Shown in pieces: positions 3,919 through 48,469 of a stretch of 64,000 nucleotides of DNA; the stretch's first letter is position 1, and every line of letters begins with the position of its first letter. The translations under genes and the position numbers were made by a program. The notes under the pieces were generated by a model. It did no database searches. It was not told the DNA's origin and saw only the letters and a list, made by a program, of their open reading frames with translations. This DNA is from Zootoca vivipara (taxonomy: Eukaryota): assembly GCF_963506605.1 (NCBI RefSeq), contig NC_083276.1, positions 22,382,001 through 22,446,000 on the forward strand, read 5' to 3'.

Positions 3919-4459
3919 GTAAGTTTTCATAACTACAATTAACTACAAATAGTTTAAAATGGATAATAAGTGATTATTTTAGTCTGCAATTTTATACATT
4001 TCTGTTTGGCAGTAAGCCCCTATTGAACACATTGAAAAGTGGGTTGTTGTTGTTGTTTTTTGAAAAGTGGGACTTTTCATAAGAATGCACTGTAGTAATA
4101 CTGTATTTGATGTATTGTAGTGCAATGACCCTTGCTGTAACCAGCAGATAAAAATATTATTATGTTACAGTTGGTGGTTAACATGCACGCCTGTACAAGC
4201 TTATAATAAAAGTTAACAATTCAGAGAAGAACCTTGACCAGCATTTACTATTTATTAGAATGTTGAAAAGTGGGATCTGCATTTATTAACTGTTAAGAGG
4301 CTCCAGTTAAATTAAATAACCATGCAGTGTGAAGTACCTCTGTTCATGTTGCTAGCCACTCCATTCCTTCACTCTCATCCCCTAACTTTCTGGGCCCTCC
4401 CAACAGCCACCCTTCCATGCACATTGAATGTTACCTAAAAACATGAAAAACTCTTCTAG

Positions 4460-4562
4460 GTTAGGCTAATGACCCATGTAGTTCAGCATCCTGTTCTTAC
4501 ATTGGCCAGCCCATGGGAGGACCTGGATGCAGTAACACTCTCCCCACCTGCAGTTCCCATAC
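4460..4562 (-). mobile_element. Degraded CR1/L3-type LINE 3' fragment; probably resumes at ~7340-7395
   Basis: Similar to the CR1-type fragment at 42937-43470 (cagcatcctgttctyac...ggccag...cccatggga). Confidence 0.5.
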
Positions 4563-4586
4563 TGGGTGGAATTCTTCAGAGCACTA

Positions 4587-7160
4587 CCGTGTTTCTCATA
4601 TTTTAAGGCATCCCCAAAAAATAAGCCATGACAGGATTTCTAAGGGTTGGTGAAAAATAAGACATACCCCGAAAATAAGCCATGTCGTGTAGCCCCGACC
4701 GAGCGAGAGGCGAACGCGCGGGACCCAGCAGGAGCTCCCTGCCTGCTTCCCCGAGCCGTCGCGCATCGGGGGACAGAGCCGAAGATCGGCGGGCGCTCCT
4801 TGCTGGGCTTGACAAGCCCGGGAAACAGCGCCCGCCGATCTTCGGACCTGTGCTGTGTGACAGGCAGGGGTGGGGGGAAGCGGAGATCGTTCTCCGCTCT
4901 CCCCCCACCCCCGCCTGTCACCAAAGATCGGCGGGCGCTCCTTGCTGGGCTTGACAAGCCCGGCAAACAGCGCCCGCCGATCTTCGGACCTGTCCTGTGT
5001 GACAGGCGGGGGTGGGGTGGGGAAGCGGAGATCGTTCTCCGCTCTCCCCCCACCCCCGCCTGTCACCAAAGATCGGCGGGCGCTGTTTGCCGGGCTTGTC
5101 AAGCCCAGCAAGGAGCGCCCGCCGATCTTCGGACCTGTCCTGTGTGACAGGCGGGGGGGGGAAGCGGAGATCGTTCTCCGCTCTCCCCCCACCCCCGCCT
5201 GTCACCAAAGATCGGCGGGCGCTCCTTGCTGGGCTTGACAAGCCCGGCAAACAGCGCCCGCCGACCTGTGCTGTGTGACAGGCGGGGGTGGGGGGGAAGC
5301 GGAGATCGTTCTCCGCTCTCCGCCCACCCCCGCCTGTCACCGAAGATCGGCGGGGGCTGTTTGCTGGGCTTGACAAGCCCGGCAAACAGCGCCCGCCGAT
5401 CTTCGGACCTGTCCTGTGTGACAGGCGGGGGTGGGGGGGAAGCGGAGATCGTTCTCCGCTCTCCCCCCACCCCCGCCTGTCACCAAAGATCGGCAAACAG
5501 CGCCCGGCAAACAGCGCCCGCCGATCTTCGGACCTGTCCTGTGTGACAGGCGGGGGTGGGGGGGAAGCGGAGATCGTGCTCCGCTCTCCCCCCATCCCCG
5601 CCTGTCACCGAAGATCGGCGGGCGCTCCTAGCTGGGCTTGACAAGCCCGGCAAACAGCGCCCGCCGACCTGTGCAGTGTGACAGGCGGGGGTGGGGGGGG
5701 AGCGGAGATTGTTCTCCGCTCTCCCCCGCCTGTCACCGAAGATCGGCGGGCGCTGTTTGCTGGGCTTGACAAGCCCGGCAAACAGCGCCTGCCGATCTTC
5801 GGACCTGTCCTGTGTGACAGGCGGGGGTGGGGGGGAAGCGGAGATCGTTCTCCGCTCTCCCCCCACCCCCGCCTGTCACCGAAGATCGGCGGGCGCTGTT
5901 TGCTGGGCTTGACAAGCCCGGCAAACAGCGCCTGCCGATCTTCGGACCTGTCCTGTGTGACAGGCGGGGGTGGGGGGGAAGTGGAGATCGTTCTCCGCTC
6001 TCCCCCCACCCCCGCCTGTCACCGAAGATCGGCGGGCGCTGTTTGCTGGGCTTGACAAGCCCGGCAAACAGCGCCCGCCGATCTTCGGACCTGTCCTGTG
6101 TGACAGGCGGGGGTGGGGGGGAAGCGGAGATAGTTCTCCGCTCTCCCCCCACCCCCGCCTGTCACCAAAGATCGGCGGGCGCTCCTTGCTGGGCTTGACA
6201 AGCCCGGCAAACAGCGCCCGCCGATCTTCGGACCTGTCCTGTGTGACAGGCGGGGGTGGGGGGGAAGCGGAGATCGTGCTCCGCTCTCCCCCCACCCCCG
6301 CCTGTCACCAAAGATCGGCGGGCGCTGTTTGCTGGGCTTGACAAGCCCGGCAAACAGCGCCCGCCGACCTGTGCTGTGTGACAGGCGGGGGTGGGGGAGA
6401 AGCGGAGATCGTTCTCCGCTCTCCCCCCATCCCCGCCTGTCACCGAAGATCGGCGGGCGCTCCTAGCTGGGCTTGACAAGCCCAGCAAACAGCGCCCGCC
6501 GACCTGTGCTGTGTGACAGGCGGGGGTGGGGGGGAAGCGGAGATCGTTCTCCGCTCTCCGCCCACCCCCGCCTGTCACCGAAGATCGGCGGGCACTGTTT
6601 GCTGGGCTTGACAAGCCCGGCAAACAGCGCCCGCCGATCTTCGGACCTGTCCTGTGTGACAGGCGGGGGTGGGGGGGGAAGCGGAGATCGTTCTCCGCTC
6701 TCCCCCCACCCCCGCCTGTCACCAAAGATCGGCGGGCCCTCCTTGCTGGGCTTGACAAGCCCGGCAAACAGCGCCCGCCGATCTTCGGACCTGTCCTGTG
6801 TGACAGGCGGGGGTGGGGGAGAAGCGGAGATCGTTCTCCGCTCTCCCCCCATCCCCGCCTGTCACCGAAGATCGGCGGGCGCTCCTAGCTGGGCTTGACA
6901 AGCCCGGCAAACAGCGCCCGCCGACCTGTGCTGTGTGACAGGCGGGGGTGGGGGGGAAGCGGAGATCGTTCTCCGCTCTCCGCCCACCCCCGCCTGTCAC
7001 CGAAGATCGGCAGGCGCTGTTTGCTGGGCTTGACAAGCCCGGCAAACAGCACCCGCGTGCACTTTATTAAAAAATAAGACATCCCTCAAAAATAAGCCAT
7101 GTCGTGTTTTTTTGAAGAAAAAATTAATATAAGACATGACTTATAATATGAGAAACACGG
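4587..7160. mobile_element. Non-autonomous Tc1/mariner-superfamily (Tc2-like) DNA transposon with internal palindromic tandem array, copy 1 (2574 bp)
   Basis: TA on both sides (4585-86, 7161-62). TIR CCGTGTTTCTCATATT(T/A)TAAG, 20/21 match. Subterminal AAAATAAG(A/C)CAT motifs. No transposase. Confidence 0.92.
4779..7056. repeat. GC-rich tandem array, ~16.5 units of mostly 135-144 bp, each with two long palindromes
   Basis: 17 hairpin-A positions (cttgacaag centre; one inverted, one deleted) alternate with 16 hairpin-B (gcggagatcgttctccgc). Confidence 0.95.
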
Positions 7161-7162
7161 TA

Positions 7163-10248: not shown

Positions 10249-10616
10249 AAGAATATCCCACCCATCTGGCTGGGTTTCCCCAGCCACTCTGGGCGGCTCC
10301 CAACAGAATATTAAAAACACGATAAAACATCAAACATAAAAAAAAAACATACCTTCAGATGTCTTCTAAAAGTCAGATAGCTGTTTATTTCCTTGACATC
10401 TGATGGGAGGGCATTCCACAGGGTGGGTGCCACCACCGAGAAGGCCCTCTTCCTGGTTCCCTGTAAAATCACTTCTCGCAGTGAGGGAACCCCTGAAGAT
10501 CCTCGGAGCTGGACCTCAGTGTCCAGACTAAACAATGGGTGTGGAGACGCTCCTTCAGGTATACTGGACCGAGGCTGTTTAGGGCTTTAAAGGTCAGCAC
10601 CAACACTTTGAATTGT
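10212..10616 (-). mobile_element. L2-type LINE 3' fragment with (CAT)n tail
   Basis: Minus-strand peptide RAFSVVAPTLWNALP...FRRHLK is typical of the L2 ORF2 C-terminus. Sister copies at 48137 and 55591. Confidence 0.85.
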
Positions 10617-27070: not shown

Positions 27071-30000
27071 CCGTGTTTCTCATATTTTAAGGCATCCCCA
27101 AAAAATAAGCCATGACAGGATTTCTAAGGGTTGGTGAAAAATAAGACATACCCCGAAAATAAGCCATGTCGTGTAGCCCCGACCGAGCGAGAGGCGAAGG
27201 CGCGGGACCCAGCAGGAGCTCCCTGCCTGCTTCCCCGAGCCGTCGCGCATCGGGGGACAGAGCCGAAGATCGGAGGGCGCTCCTTGCTGGGCTTGACAAG
27301 CCCGGCAAACAGCGCCCGCCGATCTTCGGACCTGTGCTGTGTGACAGGCAGGGGTGGGGGGAAGCGGAGATCGTTCTCCGCTCTCCCCCCACCCCCGCCT
27401 GTCACCAAAGATCGGCGGGCGCTCCTTGCTGGGCTTGACAAGCCCGGCAAACAGCGCCCGCCGATCTTCGGACCTGTCCTGTGTGACAGGCGGGGGTGGG
27501 GGGGGGGAAGCGGAGATCGTTCTCCGCTCTCCCCCCACCCCCGCCTGTCACCAAAGATCGGCGGGCGCTGTTTGCTGGGCTTGACAAGCCCGGCAAACAG
27601 CGCCCGCCGATCTTCGGACCTGTCCTGTGTGACAGGCGGGGGTGGGGGGGAAGCGGAGATCGTTCTCCGCTCTCCCCCCACCCCCGCCTGTCACCAAAGA
27701 TCGGCGGGCACTGTTTGCTGGGCTTGACAAGCCCGGCAAACAGCGCCCGCCGATCTTCGGACCTGTCCTGTGTGACAGGTGGGGGTGGGGGGGGAAGCGG
27801 AGATCGTTCTCTGCTCTCCGCCCACCCCCGCCTGTCACCGAAGATCGGCGGGCGCTCCTAGCTGGGCTTGACAAGCCCGGCAAACAGCGCCCGCCGATCT
27901 TCGGCCCTGTGCTGTGTGACAGGCGGGGGTGGGGGGGAAGCGGAGATCGTTCTCCGCTCTCCCCCCACCCCCGCCTGTCACCAAAGATCGGCGGGCGCTC
28001 CTTGCTGGGCTTGACAAGCCCGGCAAACAGCGCCCGCCGACCTGTGCTGTGTGACAGGCGGGGGTGGGGGAGAAGCGGAGATCGTTCTCCGCTCTCCGCC
28101 CACCCCCGCCTGTCACCAAAGATCGGCGGGCGCTCCTTGCTGGGCTTGACAAGCCCGGCAAACAGCACCCGCCGACCTGTGCTGTGTGACAGGCGGGGGT
28201 GGGGGAGAAGCGGAGATCGTTCTCCGCTCTCCCCCCACCCCCGCCTGTCACCAAAGATCGGCGGGCACTGTTTGCTGGGCTTGACAAGCCCGGCAAACAG
28301 CGCCCGCCGATCTTCGGACCTGTCCTGTGTGACAGGTGGGGGTGGGGGGGGAAGCGGAGATCGTTCTCTGCTCTCCGCCCACCCCCGCCTGTCACCGAAG
28401 ATCGGCGGGCGCTCCTAGCTGGGCTTGACAAGCCCGGCAAACAGCGCCCGCCGATCTTCGGCCCTGTGCTGTGTGACAGGCGGGGGTGGGCGAGAAGCGG
28501 AGATCGTTCTCCGCTCTCCCCCCACCCCCGCCTGTCACCAAAGATCGGCGGGCGCTCCTTGCTGGGCTTGACAAGCCCGGCAAACAGCGCCCGCCGACCT
28601 GTGCTGTGTGACAGGCGGGGGTGGGGGAGAAGCGGAGATCGTTCTCCGCTCTCCGCCCACCCCCGCCTGTCACCAAAGATCGGCGGGCGCTCCTTGCTGG
28701 GCTTGACAAGCCCGGCAAACAGCACCCGCCGACCTGTGCTGTGTGACAGGCGGGGGTGGGGGGGGAAGCGGAGATCGTTCTCTGCTCTCCGCCCACCCCC
28801 GCCTGTCACCGAAGATCGGCGGGCGCTCCTAGCTGGGCTTGACAAGCCCGGCAAACAGCGCCCGCCGATCTTCGGCCCTGTGCTGTGTGACAGGCGGGGG
28901 TGGGCGAGAAGCGGAGATCGTTCTCCGCTCTCCCCCCACCCCCGCCTGTCACCAAAGATCGGCGGGCGCTCCTTGCTGGGCTTGACAAGCCCGGCAAACA
29001 GCGCCCGCCGATCTTCGGACCTGTCCTGTGTGACAGGCGGGGGTGGGGGGGAAGCGGAGATCGTGCTCCGCTCTCCCCCCACCCCCGCCTGTCACCAAAG
29101 ATCGGCGGGCGCTCCTTGCTGGGCTTGACAAGCCCGGCAAACAGCGCCCGCCGATCTTCGGACCTGTCCTGTGTGACAGGCGGGGGTGGGGGGGGAAGCG
29201 GAGATCGTTCTCCGCTCTCCCCCCACCCCCGCCTGTCACCAAAGATCGGCGGGCGCTCCTTGCTGGGCTTGACAAGCCCGGCAAACAGCGCCCGCCGATC
29301 TTCGGACCTGTCCTGTGTGACAGGCGGGGGTGGGGGGGAAGCGGAGATCGTTCTCCGCTCTCCCCCCACCCCCGCCTGTCACCAAAGATCGGCGGGCGCT
29401 CCTAGCTGGGCTTGACAAGCCCGGCAAACAGCGCCCGCCGACCTGTGCTGTGTGACAGGCGGGGGTGGGGGGGAAGCGGAGATCGTTCTCCGCTCTCCGC
29501 CCACCCCCGCCTGTCACCGAAGATCGGCGGGCGCTGTTTGCTGGGCTTGACAAGCCCGGCAAACAGCGCCTGCCGATCTTCGGACCTGTCCTGTGTGACA
29601 GGCGGGGGTGGGGGGGAAGCGGAGATCGTTCTCCGCTCTCCCCCCACCCCCGCCTGTCACCAAAGATCGGCGGGCGCTCCTTGCTGGGCTTGACAAGCCC
29701 GGCAAACAGCGCCCGCCGACCTTCGGACCTGTCCTGTGTGACAGGCGGGGGTGGGGGGGGAAGCGGAGATCGTTCTCCGCTCTCCCCCCACCCCCACCTG
29801 TCACCAAAGATCGGCGGGCGCTCCTTGCTGGGCTTGACAAGCCCGGCAAACAGCGCCTGCCGATCTTCGGACCTGTCCTGTGTGACAGGCGGGGGTGGGG
29901 GAGAAGCGGAGATCGTTCTCCGCTCTCCGCCCACCCCCGCCTGTCACCGAAGATCGGCGGGCGCTCCTAGCTGGGCTTGACAAGCCCGGCAAACAGCGCC

Positions 30001-30669
30001 CGCCGACCTGTGCTGTGTGGCAGGCGGGGTGGGGGGGAAGCGGAGATCGTTCTCCGCTCTCCGCCCACCCCCGCCTGTCACCGAAGATCGGCGGGCGCTG
30101 TTTGCTGGGCTTGACAAGCCCGGCAAACAGCGCCCGCCGATCTTCGGACCTGTCCTGTGTGACAGGCGGGGGTGGGGGGGAAGCGGAGATCGTTCTCCGC
30201 TCTCCCCCCACCCCCGCCTGTCACCAAAGATCGGCGGGCGCTCCTTGCTGGGCTTGACAAGCCCGGCAAACAGCGCCCGCCGATCTTCGGACCTGTCCTG
30301 TGTGACAGGGGGGGTGGGGGGGAAGCGGAGATCGTGCTCCGCTCTCCCCCCACCCCCGCCTGTCACCAAAGATCGGCGGGCGCTGTTTGCTGGGCTTGAC
30401 AAGCCCGGCAAACAGCGCCCGCCGATCTTCGGCCCTGTGCTGTGTGACAGGCGGGGGTGGGGGAGAAGCGGAGATCGTTCTCCGCTCTCCCCCCATCCCC
30501 GCCTGTCACCGAAGATCGGCGGGCGCTCCTTGCTGGGCTTGACAAGCCCGGCAAACAGCGCCCGCGTGCACTTTATTAAAAAATAAGACATCCCTCAAAA
30601 ATAAGCCATGTCGTGTTTTTTTGAAGAAAAAATTAATATAAGACATGACTTATAATATGAGAAACACGG
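27071..30669. mobile_element. Non-autonomous Tc2-like DNA transposon with palindromic tandem array, copy 2 (3599 bp), same orientation as copy 1
   Basis: TA at 27069-70 and 30670-71. Same TIRs as copy 1. Non-array ends almost identical to copy 1. Flanks unrelated to those of copy 1. Confidence 0.92.
27263..30565. repeat. GC-rich tandem array, ~23.5 units of 134-146 bp
   Basis: 24 cttgacaag hairpin centres counted. Confidence 0.95.
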
Positions 30670-30931
30670 TATTAAGTGTATTAAGTTTAATCAGAGCTCT
30701 AAAGCAAGGTTTAGGGGCATCGCAGAGTTCATTTTATGACTGGTTAACAGTTATCAGATACAGCAATGAACCAAGCGTGAAGGGCATCTCATTCTGTGCC
30801 TGCCACCCATCCTATTATGAGTGATCCGAGGTATTATAACATCTTCCTATGACCACAGCAGTAGTATGGGCAGGGCCTGTTTTTAATAAGAATACTATTT
30901 GTTGTTGATGATGATGATAGTAGTAGTAGTA

Positions 30932-31218
30932 GAAGAAGAAGAAGAAGAAGAAGAAGAAGAAGAAGAAGAAGAAGAAGAAGAGAAGAGTTTGGATTTGATA
31001 TCCCGCTTTATCACTACCCAAAGGAGTCTCAAAGCGGCTAACATTCTCCTTTCCCACCTCCCCCACAACAAACACTCTGTGAGATGAGTGAGGCTGAGAG
31101 ACTTCAAAGAAGTGTGACTAGCCCAAGGTCACCCAGCAGCTGCATGTGGAGGAGACGCGAACCCGGTTCCCCAGATTAGGAGTCTACCACTCTTAACTAC
31201 TATACCACACTGGCTCTC
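30932..31218 (-). mobile_element. Squam3-type tRNA-derived SINE with (CTT)n tail, giving ~(GAA)16 on the + strand
   Basis: Minus strand begins GAGAGCCAGTGTGGTATAGTAGTTAAGAG...GGGTTCGC. Ends ATCAAATCCAAACTCTT(CTT)n. Flanked by agtagtagtagta on both sides. Confidence 0.85.
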
Positions 31219-36527: not shown

Positions 36528-36853
36528 CAGTGGAACCTTGGTTTATGAACACCTTGGTTTACGAATTTTCGGTTTACGAATTTTCTGGAACGGATTAATT
36601 CACTTTCCATTACTTTCAATGGGAAAGTTCGCTTCAGTTTATGAACGCTTCAGTTTATGAACAGACTTCTGGAACCAATTACACCCATGCTTCAGGTTAA
36701 GTACGCTTCAGGTTGAGTACTCTGCAGACCATCTGGAACAGATTAATCCACTTTCCATTACTTTCAATGGGAAAGTTCGCTTCAGTTTATGAACGCTTCA
36801 GTTTATGAACAGACGTCCGGAACCAATTGTGTCCATAAACCGAGGTACCACTG
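36528..36853. mobile_element. Tigger-like MITE with internal 148-bp-period duplication
   Basis: TA|CAGTGGAACCTTGGTTTATG ... CATAAACCGAGGTACCACTG|TA; 36584-36680 repeated at 36732-36828. Confidence 0.9.
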
Positions 36854-48136: not shown

Positions 48137-48469
48137 TAATAATAATATTATAAAATTTTATTATTTATACCCTGCCCATCTGGCTGGGTTTCCCCAGTCA
48201 CTGTGGGCAGCTCCCAACAGAATATTAAAAACACGATAATACATCAAACATAAAAAACTTCCCCAAACAGGGTTGCCTTCAGATGTCTTCTAAAAGTCAG
48301 GTAGTTTCTTGACATCTGATGGGAGGGTGTTCCACAGGGTGGCCGCCACTACCGAGAAGGCCCTCTGCCTGGTTCTCTGTAACCTTACTTCTCGCATTGA
48401 GGGAATCAGCAGAAAGCCCTCGGAGCTGGACCTCAGTGTTCGGGCTGAACGATGGGGGTGGAGACGCTC
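48137..48469 (-). mobile_element. L2-type LINE 3' fragment
   Basis: Close match to 10260-10551. Confidence 0.85.

What the first reader, a model, noticed from the sequence alone, without database searches (positions are those of the whole stretch)
4587..7160. Young Tc2-like transposon whose body is an expandable array of double palindromes
Seen: TA-flanked element with 21-bp CCGT-initiated TIRs and reiterated AAAATAAG(A/C)CAT subterminal motifs. It has ~190 bp and ~105 bp unique ends around a ~143-bp tandem unit. Each unit is palindrome A (33-bp arms, 1-nt centre, ccgaagatcggcgggcgctgtttgctgggcttg-a-caagcc...), a ~10-bp spacer, and palindrome B (~31-bp arms, gtgacaggcgggggtggggggg..agcggaga-tcgt-tctccgct...). 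About 93% of the array is therefore self-complementary. Known: TA TSD with CCGT ends fits the Tc2 group of Tc1/mariner, and MITE-borne tandem repeats exist (Xenopus Xmix/Xstir, Drosophila Tetris). Inference: a mobile satellite seed or cruciform cassette. I do not recognise this double-hairpin architecture as described in lizards.
Basis: partly seen in the sequence, partly recalled or inferred. Interest (0 to 1): 0.85.

Follow-up and report, generated by a model that had tools for sequence, protein, structure and literature searches.

The report
Lizard transposon carrying hairpin minisatellite cargo
A young, non-coding cut-and-paste transposon in a lacertid lizard carries a 143-bp tandem repeat whose units fold into two hairpins and whose unit number differs between copies; it is a clean new example of a known habit of small transposons, not a new kind of element.

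Summary
Window 4587-7160 is bounded by TA|CCGTGTTTCTCATATT...AATATGAGAAACACGG|TA. It holds 16.4 units of a 143-bp, 68% G+C repeat, and each unit folds into two long hairpins (-81 kcal/mol, z = -19).

A second insertion at 27071-30669 has different flanks and its own TA duplication. Its ends are almost identical (1 difference in 297 nt), but it has 23.4 units. So the element moves, and the array changes much faster than the ends.

Contigs from public runs add three points:
- The repeat boundary lies exactly at 4586/4587.
- A cargo-less chassis of about 157 bp exists and is hyper-abundant.
- The cargo-bearing form is present at roughly 100 near-identical copies, and also in a second species. A third species with the orthologous flank has almost none.

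The "body" is therefore cargo, bracketed by a 38-bp direct duplication of chassis sequence.

The "double palindrome" is simpler than it looks. The array is 90% identical to its own reverse complement, which is what tandem repetition of one palindrome produces.

Tc2 membership could not be tested because no transposase was found. The closest known cases are the Xenopus miDNA4 and bivalve tandem-repeat MITEs and GC-rich Pack-TIR capture. The scan had already noted, on other DNA of this genome, the same chassis with other cargos and a Helitron with a 152-bp double-hairpin satellite.

Interest is modest.

The parts
4585..4586 (.). Left TA target-site duplication of copy 1
   Evidence: Single-copy flank contigs of two individuals end exactly at 4586. 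A contig from the second species starts at 4585 with TA+TIR.
4587..4611 (+). Left terminal inverted repeat (16 nt perfect, 23/25 overall)
4587..4690 (+). Left chassis arm (104 bp, 39% G+C) with motif copies at 4618, 4654 and 4672
   Evidence: Contigs from other family members leave the sequence after 4690 and run directly into right-arm sequence.
4691..4779 (+). Unique GC-rich cargo segment (89 bp, 74% G+C, CpG o/e 0.98); origin unknown
   Evidence: It is 88/89 identical in copy 2. 4715 C is private to copy 1, and every other contig reads G.
4780..7056 (.). Tandem array of 16 units (125-146 bp) plus a 56-bp partial unit. Each unit is palindrome A, an 11-nt spacer, then palindrome B.
5080..5118 (.). 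Core of palindrome A in unit 3, present as the exact reverse complement of the common variant (in-place flip)
   Evidence: The printed string matches after a 1-nt shift of coordinates.
5484..5608 (.). Unit 6, where the centre of palindrome A is deleted and a 14-bp piece is duplicated (palindrome-destroying rearrangement)
7057..7069 (+). 13-bp junction (GTGCACTTTATTA) between the truncated last unit and chassis sequence
   Evidence: identical in copy 2
7070..7107 (+). 38-bp direct duplicate of chassis positions 4653-4690 (35/38 identical), bracketing the cargo
7108..7160 (+). Right chassis arm (53 bp), including the right TIR at 7136-7160
7161..7162 (.). Right TA target-site duplication of copy 1
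27071..30669 (+). Second, independent insertion of the same element. It has TA on both sides and unrelated flanks. The array at 27264-30565 has 23.4 units and contains a recent 4-unit block duplication (27695-28251 vs 28252-28809, 552/557 identical).

Best explanation
This is a non-autonomous cut-and-paste DNA transposon of the TA-targeting (Tc1/mariner-like) kind.

Its working parts are a chassis of about 157 bp: 104 bp on the left and 53 bp on the right, with 16-25-bp TIRs and ATAAGNCAT-type subterminal motifs. This chassis is extremely abundant in this lizard. It is presumably moved in trans by a transposase encoded elsewhere.

One chassis copy took up foreign GC-rich DNA: an 89-bp unique piece plus a 143-bp tandem repeat. 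The most likely route is template switching during repair or replication, with the return switch landing 38 bp too early. That would have left the 38-bp direct duplication that brackets the cargo.

The loaded element stayed mobile and spread recently to the order of 100 nearly identical copies. Two of them lie 22.5 kb apart in this window.

The array is a passenger. Its unit is one long palindrome repeated in tandem, which creates a second dyad at every junction. Single strands therefore fold into two hairpins per unit.

Unit number changes quickly, through replication slippage, unequal exchange, or synthesis-dependent repair of the gap left by excision. The hairpins probably promote stalling and misalignment.

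Shown: the anatomy, mobility, youth, copy-number class, array turnover, palindrome flip and centre deletion. Inferred: the capture route, the role of the hairpins in the instability, and the transposase.
For: Mobility and boundaries
- Two copies have unrelated flanks, and each is bounded by TA.
- Flank contigs from two different individuals stop exactly at 4586. A second-species contig spans 4585-4800 with 7 differences.

Youth
- The ends of the two copies differ at 1 of 297 nt.
- An 89-nt left-arm contig with no differences has depth 443 against 4.8 for the flank. A 57-nt cargo/array-junction contig with no differences has depth 1887 against 19.3. Both ratios are of order 100 and are rough.
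- CpG o/e is 0.79-0.98 in the cargo, against 0.28-0.30 in the flanks.

Chassis with and without cargo
- Contigs leave the sequence at 4690 and continue as TTTTTTGAAGAAAAAAT..ATATAAGACAT, which is the start of the right arm at 7108.
- Other contigs attach different GC-rich sequence at 4683 and before 4652/4653.
- Summed depth over the TIR is 10^3-10^4 times the flank depth.
- The chassis shows no similarity to the unit.

Array turnover
- There are 16.4 units in one copy and 23.4 in the other. The first two units are orthologous (284/287) and the variant repertoire is shared, but the internal order differs.
- Recent block duplications reach 552/557 and 143/143 identity.

Palindromes
- One unit folds at -81 kcal/mol, z = -19.
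- The array is 90% identical to its own reverse complement.
- One unit carries an exact in-place flip of a palindrome core. Another has lost the centre of palindrome A.

Literature
- Tc1/mariner MITEs with variable internal satellites are described (miDNA4, PMC12628747).
- Multicopy Pack-TIRs prefer GC-rich cargo and arise by template switching (PMC8277862).
- Lizard non-autonomous TA-duplication families incorporate extraneous DNA and often lack a known autonomous partner (PMC3014272).
Against: - No transposase or autonomous partner was seen, so trans-mobilisation and the subgroup are inferred.
- Copy numbers rest on summed contig word depths. The tool itself warns that these are not copy numbers.
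- The 38-bp duplicates differ at 3 positions while whole copies are 99.7% alike. The capture is therefore much older than the recent spread, or the two arms come from two different chassis copies.
- An empty orthologous site was not recovered. The third species' flank contig breaks at an upstream high-copy repeat at 4496.
- Nothing here shows that the hairpins form in vivo, beyond the flip and the centre-deletion footprints.
Confidence: 0.85

Rival explanations
1. Composite origin. Two chassis MITEs inserted in the same orientation on either side of, or into, a pre-existing genomic GC-rich minisatellite. Inner parts were then lost, and the outer TIRs now mobilise everything between them. No template-switch capture into a single MITE would be needed.
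For: - The overlapping 38 bp of the two arms differ at 3 positions (92%), although whole copies are 99.7% alike. That fits arms drawn from two different chassis copies.
- The chassis is hyper-abundant, so neighbouring insertions are likely.
Against: - It needs two separate internal deletions that happen to leave overlapping chassis segments.
- Other cargos join the chassis at the same points (4683/4690 and 4652/4653). That suggests a preferred switch point rather than independent accidents.
Confidence: 0.25
2. The array was born inside the element. A single captured palindromic segment of about 130-143 bp was amplified in situ, so no pre-existing satellite was captured.
For: - The array starts at a unit boundary right after the 89-bp unique cargo and ends inside a unit.
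- The first two units are conserved between copies, while inner units turn over.
- No units occur outside the two elements in 64 kb.
Against: It cannot be told apart from capture of an existing array without a genome-wide search. The miDNA4 model favours capture of a pre-existing repeat (PMC12628747).
Confidence: 0.4
3. The hairpin array has a function of its own. For example, it could be a source of hairpin RNA or small RNAs, or a mobile CpG island that alters regulation of the host gene.
For: - Each hairpin is pre-miRNA-sized and scores 35-77 bits against many unrelated miRNA-precursor models.
- The array meets formal CpG-island criteria: 68% G+C, o/e 0.79, more than 2 kb.
Against: - Every Rfam match is well below its family's gathering score and spread over many unrelated families. 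That is what any perfect GC-rich hairpin gives.
- No RNA run held the stretch.
- About 12-14 of 44 distinct unit variants are CpG transitions, although CpG sites make up about 18% of positions. This points to germline methylation rather than an unmethylated island.
- Units decay by deletion and flipping without sign of constraint.
Confidence: 0.05
4. The element is not a transposon. The two copies would come from segmental duplication or false duplication in the assembly.
For: The two copies are in the same orientation only 22.5 kb apart.
Against: - The flanks are unrelated beyond the TA.
- Independent short-read contigs show the same boundary and high multiplicity, and the element occurs in a second species.
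Confidence: 0.02

Closest known systems
Xenopus tropicalis miDNA4 (Tc1/mariner MITE carrying a satellite; Scalvenzi and Pollet, as summarised in PMC12628747 and PMC9659126)
   Same: - It is a vertebrate TA-type MITE whose interior is a tandem repeat, present as a variable number of units between copies.
- The repeat is thought to have been captured and is bracketed by short direct repeats.
- It is proposed as a seed of satellite DNA.
   Different: - Here the unit is a GC-rich dyad-symmetric 143-mer with an extra 89-bp unique cargo.
- The bracketing direct repeat is 38 bp of chassis sequence, not a 5-bp AT-rich microhomology.
- No emancipated satellite has been shown.
- The sequences were not compared, because no reference was on hand.
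DTC84 / pearl-type tandem-repeat MITEs of bivalves (PMC3879986)
   Same: - The flanks act as a cassette around an internal array of variable unit number.
- Repeat variants occur in ordered positions.
- A palindrome in each unit is proposed as a hotspot for length change.
   Different: - Those elements have an AA target duplication, at most about five units, and a microsatellite tail. They are now linked to Helentron-like elements.
- Here the duplication is TA, true TIRs are present, there are 16-23 units, and almost the whole unit is palindromic.
Pack-TIR elements (PMC8277862)
   Same: - A TIR transposon carries foreign DNA taken up by template switching.
- Multicopy cases favour GC-rich cargo.
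- The loaded element keeps transposing.
   Different: - Pack-TIRs are defined by an identifiable parental host locus, usually genic. No parental locus could be sought here.
- Here the cargo is mostly a tandem repeat.
Foldback-type elements (Drosophila FB, Tetris)
   Same: - The interior is made of tandem repeats and reads nearly the same on both strands.
- The whole element can therefore fold back on itself.
- These elements are linked to satellite birth.
   Different: - In FB and Tetris the repeats are part of the long TIRs themselves.
- Here the short TIRs and arms are unrelated to the unit, and the target duplication is TA.
Anolis TcMar-N non-autonomous families (PMC3014272)
   Same: - These are lizard families with TA duplications and no recognisable autonomous partner.
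- Their structures are diversified by incorporation of extraneous DNA.
- Some have ends like Tc2-related frog elements.
   Different: - The host family is different (lacertid).
- No tandem-array cargo is mentioned in the passages read.

Membership tests
Tc1/mariner-like (TA-targeting) non-autonomous DNA transposon | 2-bp TA target-site duplication | tested here: met
   TA lies on both sides of both copies, and no longer duplication is present. A second-species repeat contig begins with TA+TIR.
Tc1/mariner-like (TA-targeting) non-autonomous DNA transposon | Terminal inverted repeats at precise, family-wide boundaries | tested here: met
   The TIR is 16 nt perfect and 23/25 overall. It gives four exact hits in 64 kb; 0.43 are expected with up to 3 mismatches allowed. 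Flank contigs end at 4586.
Tc1/mariner-like (TA-targeting) non-autonomous DNA transposon | Multiple dispersed copies at unrelated sites | tested here: met
   There are two copies with unrelated flanks in the window. Contig depths are about 100 times the flank for the cargo form and 10^3-10^4 times for the TIR (rough).
Tc1/mariner-like (TA-targeting) non-autonomous DNA transposon | A DD(E/D) transposase partner with matching TIRs | not testable with these tools
   No copy with coding capacity lies in the window. The two weak TIR-like hits at 10307 and 48221 are SINE-like sequence. The host genome cannot be searched.
Tc2 / pogo subgroup | Transposase grouping with Tc2/pogo, or TIR similarity to a Tc2 reference | not testable with these tools
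No transposase was found, and Repbase and Dfam are not on hand.
MITE in the strict sense | Small size (a few hundred bp) and high copy number | tested here: inconclusive
   The loaded elements are 2.6 and 3.6 kb. A ~157-bp cargo-less form is inferred from contig loose ends at 4690, but no full copy was read.
Tandem-repeat-containing MITE (miDNA4 / Xstir / DTC84 kind) | Internal tandem array whose unit number varies between copies | tested here: met
   The two copies have 16.4 and 23.4 units, with block duplications.
Tandem-repeat-containing MITE (miDNA4 / Xstir / DTC84 kind) | The same repeat also exists as free satellite arrays | not testable with these tools
   No units lie outside the two elements in this window. 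The rest of the genome is not searchable.
Xstir / Tetris type (repeat derived from the element's own ends) | The unit is homologous to TIR or subterminal sequence | tested here: not met
   blastn with word size 7 finds no similarity between the chassis and the array.
Pack-TIR | Cargo traceable to a parental host locus | not testable with these tools
   The origin of the 89-bp segment and of the unit is unknown.
Rfam miRNA precursor families | Score at or above the family gathering threshold | tested here: not met
   The best hit is 76.7 bits against a threshold of 168. The others score 33-46 bits against thresholds of 58-105, and they are spread over many unrelated families on both strands.

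The most novel reading that the evidence does not exclude
GC-rich double-hairpin minisatellites of about 145-150 bp (roughly nucleosome length) may be a recurrent, self-amplifying cargo in this lizard. Unrelated transposon superfamilies would pick them up and spread them: this TA-type chassis, and a Helitron with a 152-bp double-hairpin unit noted elsewhere in the genome. On this reading the palindromes drive their own expansion during excision-gap repair and seed a new dispersed satellite. It would be stronger still if the two units proved homologous, or if the hairpins yield small RNAs.
Probability: 0.1. Interest if true: 0.55.

Novelty: new member of a known kind. Interest (0 to 1): 0.32.

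Why it matters
It is a well-resolved natural example of how a small DNA transposon can load, carry and scatter a tandem repeat in an amniote.

Both ends of the process are visible. An empty chassis exists alongside a loaded form that burst recently to about 100 copies. Arrays reorganise while the arms stay identical.

The family could be used to measure minisatellite turnover against a transposition clock. It could also be used to study palindrome instability in a vertebrate germline, since it shows flips, centre deletions and arm-shortening deletions. A third use is to ask whether dispersed arrays grow into satellites.

For annotation, apparent CpG islands of this type in lacertid introns are transposon cargo, not promoters.

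It does not change current understanding of transposons or satellites.

Tried and rejected
1. Autonomous partner in the window. The only other TIR-like hits (10307, 48221; 3 mismatches) are SINE-like tails, not relatives.
2. Cargo-less chassis copies in the window. None were found by sensitive blastn.
3. Known RNA family. Only sub-threshold hairpin look-alikes turned up.
4. Coding capacity. The 30 ORFs of 60 aa or more are mostly GTG/TTG-started runs through a GC-rich repeat on both strands. They were not searched further. The only non-repeat interior is 89 bp.
5. Literature string search for the TIR and unit. No paper matched. A search for TcMar-Tc2 in lizards gave nothing relevant.
6. Earlier-findings look-ups by sequence were blank.
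7. Orthologous empty site. The third species' 2.1-kb flank contig (about 96% identical) ends at 4496, inside an upstream high-copy repeat. The site could not be read.
8. Expression.
9. The array was deliberately left out of the stretch given to read laying, because that tool turns away long repeats. Joints across the whole element were therefore not sought.
10. Canonical G-quadruplex motifs. By eye, the G5/G7 runs give only three G3 tracts per unit. This was not pursued.
Full report
**What is there**

The sequence at 4587-7160 reads TA|CCGTGTTTCTCATATT ... AATATGAGAAACACGG|TA. The two ends are inverted repeats: 16 nt are perfect, 20 of 21 match, and 23 of 25 match.

The 16-mer occurs exactly four times in the 64-kb window. 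Those are the four ends of two elements. With up to three mismatches allowed, 0.43 matches are expected by chance.

Tandem Repeats Finder reports a 143-bp period, 16.4 copies and 89% matches at 4779-7050. Cutting the array at unit boundaries gives 16 units of 125-146 bp and a 56-bp partial unit. A recurrent 8-bp deletion produces 135-bp units.

One unit folded as single-stranded DNA gives two long hairpins at -81 kcal/mol. Dinucleotide shuffles give -27.8 +/- 2.8, so z = -19.4. Across all units of both copies, about 81% of bases are paired in the per-unit minimum-energy fold.

The AAAATAAG(A/C)CAT motif is present three times near each end. All six copies are in the same orientation.

**It is mobile and young**

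A second copy lies at 27071-30669, in the same orientation. Its flanks are unrelated to those of the first copy, and it has its own TA on both sides.

The 192-nt left end differs from copy 1 at one position (4715). The 105-nt right end is identical. Its array has 23.4 units.

Contigs of public runs were laid on 4000-4800; the array was left out on purpose because the tool turns away long repeats. They show the following.

- The single-copy flank contigs of two different individuals of the source species stop exactly at 4586. One of them differs from the window at several flank positions and carries a 12-bp insertion.
- Depth jumps by three to four orders of magnitude over the TIR.
- An 89-nt left-arm contig with no differences has depth 443 against 4.8 for the flank.
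- A 57-nt contig across the cargo/array junction with no differences has depth 1887 against 19.3.

The tool warns that summed depths are not copy numbers. I take these ratios only as [quoted passage not shown].

Position 4715 C is private to copy 1. Every other contig reads G, as does copy 2.

A second species yields a 224-nt contig covering 4585-4800 with 7 differences. It came from a run too shallow to assemble the flank, so the loaded element is multi-copy there too. A third species has the orthologous flank at about 96% identity but almost no TIR signal and no cargo signal.

**The array is cargo in a small chassis**

Several contigs follow the left arm to 4690 and then continue TTTTTTGAAGAAAAAAT(A)AATATAAGACAT. 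That is the sequence that starts at 7108 in the window. A cargo-less element of about 104 + 53 = 157 bp therefore exists.

Other contigs attach different GC-rich sequence after 4683, or in front of 4652/4653. That note is unchecked, apart from this indirect support.

In the window copies the cargo has four parts:
- an 89-bp unique segment at 4691-4779 (74% G+C);
- the array;
- a 13-bp junction;
- a 38-bp direct duplicate at 7070-7107 of chassis positions 4653-4690, 35 of 38 identical.

That duplicate accounts for two of the three right-hand motif copies. Sensitive blastn finds no similarity between chassis and unit. So the repeat did not grow out of the element's own ends, unlike Xstir or Tetris.

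**The double palindrome reduces to one**

Each array is 90% identical to its own reverse complement over more than 2 kb.

If one palindrome (arm X, arm X') is repeated in tandem, every junction X'|X is a second dyad. Here X is the right arm of B followed by the left arm of A. The only asymmetries are the 11-nt spacer, the 1-nt and 4-nt centres, and a few arm mismatches. One inverted duplication followed by tandem amplification is enough to produce this structure. No special two-hairpin design has to be explained.

**Array dynamics**

The first two units of the two copies are orthologous (284/287), and they share diagnostic variants. Most variant types occur in both arrays, but in different order.

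Copy 2 contains a four-unit block duplicated at 552/557 identity, plus a further unit identical to one of them (143/143). Copy 1 has two adjacent units at 142/143 and a terminal block at 187/191. Arrays therefore reorganise by multi-unit steps, far faster than the arms accumulate substitutions.

There are direct footprints of palindrome instability:
- The core of palindrome A in unit 3 (5080-5118) is the exact reverse complement of the common variant.
- Unit 6 has lost the centre of palindrome A and gained a 14-bp duplication.
- The 8-bp and 7-bp deletions shorten arms.

**Composition**

The arrays are 68% G+C with CpG o/e 0.79. The 2-kb flanks have o/e 0.28-0.30. That meets formal CpG-island criteria.

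However, 12-14 of 44 distinct unit variants are CpG transitions, while CpG positions are about 18% of the unit. This modest enrichment points to germline methylation. The high CpG content is better read as youth than as a protected island.

**Most likely mechanism**

The chassis is mobilised in trans by a TA-targeting DD(E/D) transposase. This is inferred from the TA duplication and TIRs, on established knowledge of Tc1/mariner elements.

The cargo most likely entered by template switching during gap repair or replication. The return switch landed 38 bp early. This is the route proposed for Pack-TIRs, which favour GC-rich cargo when multicopy (PMC8277862).

The loaded element then burst recently. 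Unit number changes by slippage, unequal exchange or synthesis-dependent gap repair after excision. The hairpins probably favour stalling and misalignment. All of these steps are inferred.

The two copies lie 22.5 kb apart. With about 100 copies in a genome of roughly 1.5 Gb (general knowledge for lacertids), far fewer than one neighbour is expected in 64 kb. Local hopping, well known for Tc1/mariner elements, is therefore a reasonable reading. It is untested.

**Rivals**

- Origin from two neighbouring chassis copies is possible. It would explain the three mismatches in the 38-bp overlap.
- Whether the array was captured ready-made or amplified in situ cannot be decided here.
- A function as hairpin-RNA source or mobile promoter has no support. 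All Rfam matches are far below threshold and spread over many unrelated miRNA families on both strands. No RNA run holds the stretch.
- Segmental or assembly duplication is excluded by the flanks.

**Comparison with what is known**

Tandem-repeat-bearing MITEs are established:
- Xenopus miDNA4, a Tc1/mariner MITE with a satellite of variable unit number, thought to have been captured (PMC12628747, PMC9659126);
- Xenopus Xstir;
- Drosophila Tetris;
- bivalve DTC84, where a palindrome in each unit is proposed as the hotspot for length change (PMC3879986).

In Anolis, non-autonomous TA-duplication families have diverse structures from incorporated extraneous DNA. They usually have no identifiable autonomous partner (PMC3014272).

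This element fits that kind. The Tc2 label could not be tested, because there is no transposase here and no Repbase or Dfam on hand. No paper in the held library contains the TIR or unit strings. That is weak evidence that the family is undescribed.

Earlier notes of this scan record, on other DNA of the same genome, the same sort of chassis with other cargos (s1-851738) and a Helitron with a 152-bp double-hairpin satellite (s1-850079). I could not compare those sequences.

**Verdict**

This is a real, neatly resolved, young loaded transposon. It is a new member of a known kind. Interest is modest, at about 0.3.

The host-gene context (TTC7B, from note s1-852130) was not verified here.

Noticed in passing
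window 4459-4512: About 75 bp upstream of the insertion lies a short stretch with summed contig depth of 4-8 x 10^4 in all three species laid, including the one that lacks the transposon. It looks like a fragment of an older, very abundant interspersed repeat; loose ends read ...GCCTGCTGGATCAGGCC.... It breaks the flank contig of the third species at 4496.
   Followed up: no
window 10250-10330 and 48160-48250 (- strand): Two copies of a SINE-like tail (…ATCGTGTTTTTAATATTCTGTTGGGAGCCGCCCAGAGTGGCTGGGGAAACCCAGCCAGATGGG…) match the transposon TIR with 3 mismatches by chance. The first is followed by a (GAT)11 microsatellite.
   Followed up: partly
window 4587-7160 and 27071-30669: Two copies of a family of about 100 copies lie 22.5 kb apart in the same orientation. 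This is far closer than random placement predicts and is compatible with local hopping or a regional insertion preference.
   Followed up: no
window 4517 (run X7): One individual of the source species carries a 12-bp insertion (AGGTCCACAAGC) behind 4517 and several T>C differences in the left flank. Its flank contig still ends at 4586, so the insertion is shared by at least two haplotypes.
   Followed up: partly
window 36535-36810: A cluster of short 15-16-bp direct repeats (CGCTTCAGTTTATGAA, GGTTTACGAA…) was reported by Tandem Repeats Finder. It looks like the repetitive subterminal region of another transposon.
   Followed up: no
window 30900-30990: Compound trinucleotide microsatellite (GAT/AGT/AGA runs) about 230 bp downstream of the second insertion.
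   Followed up: no
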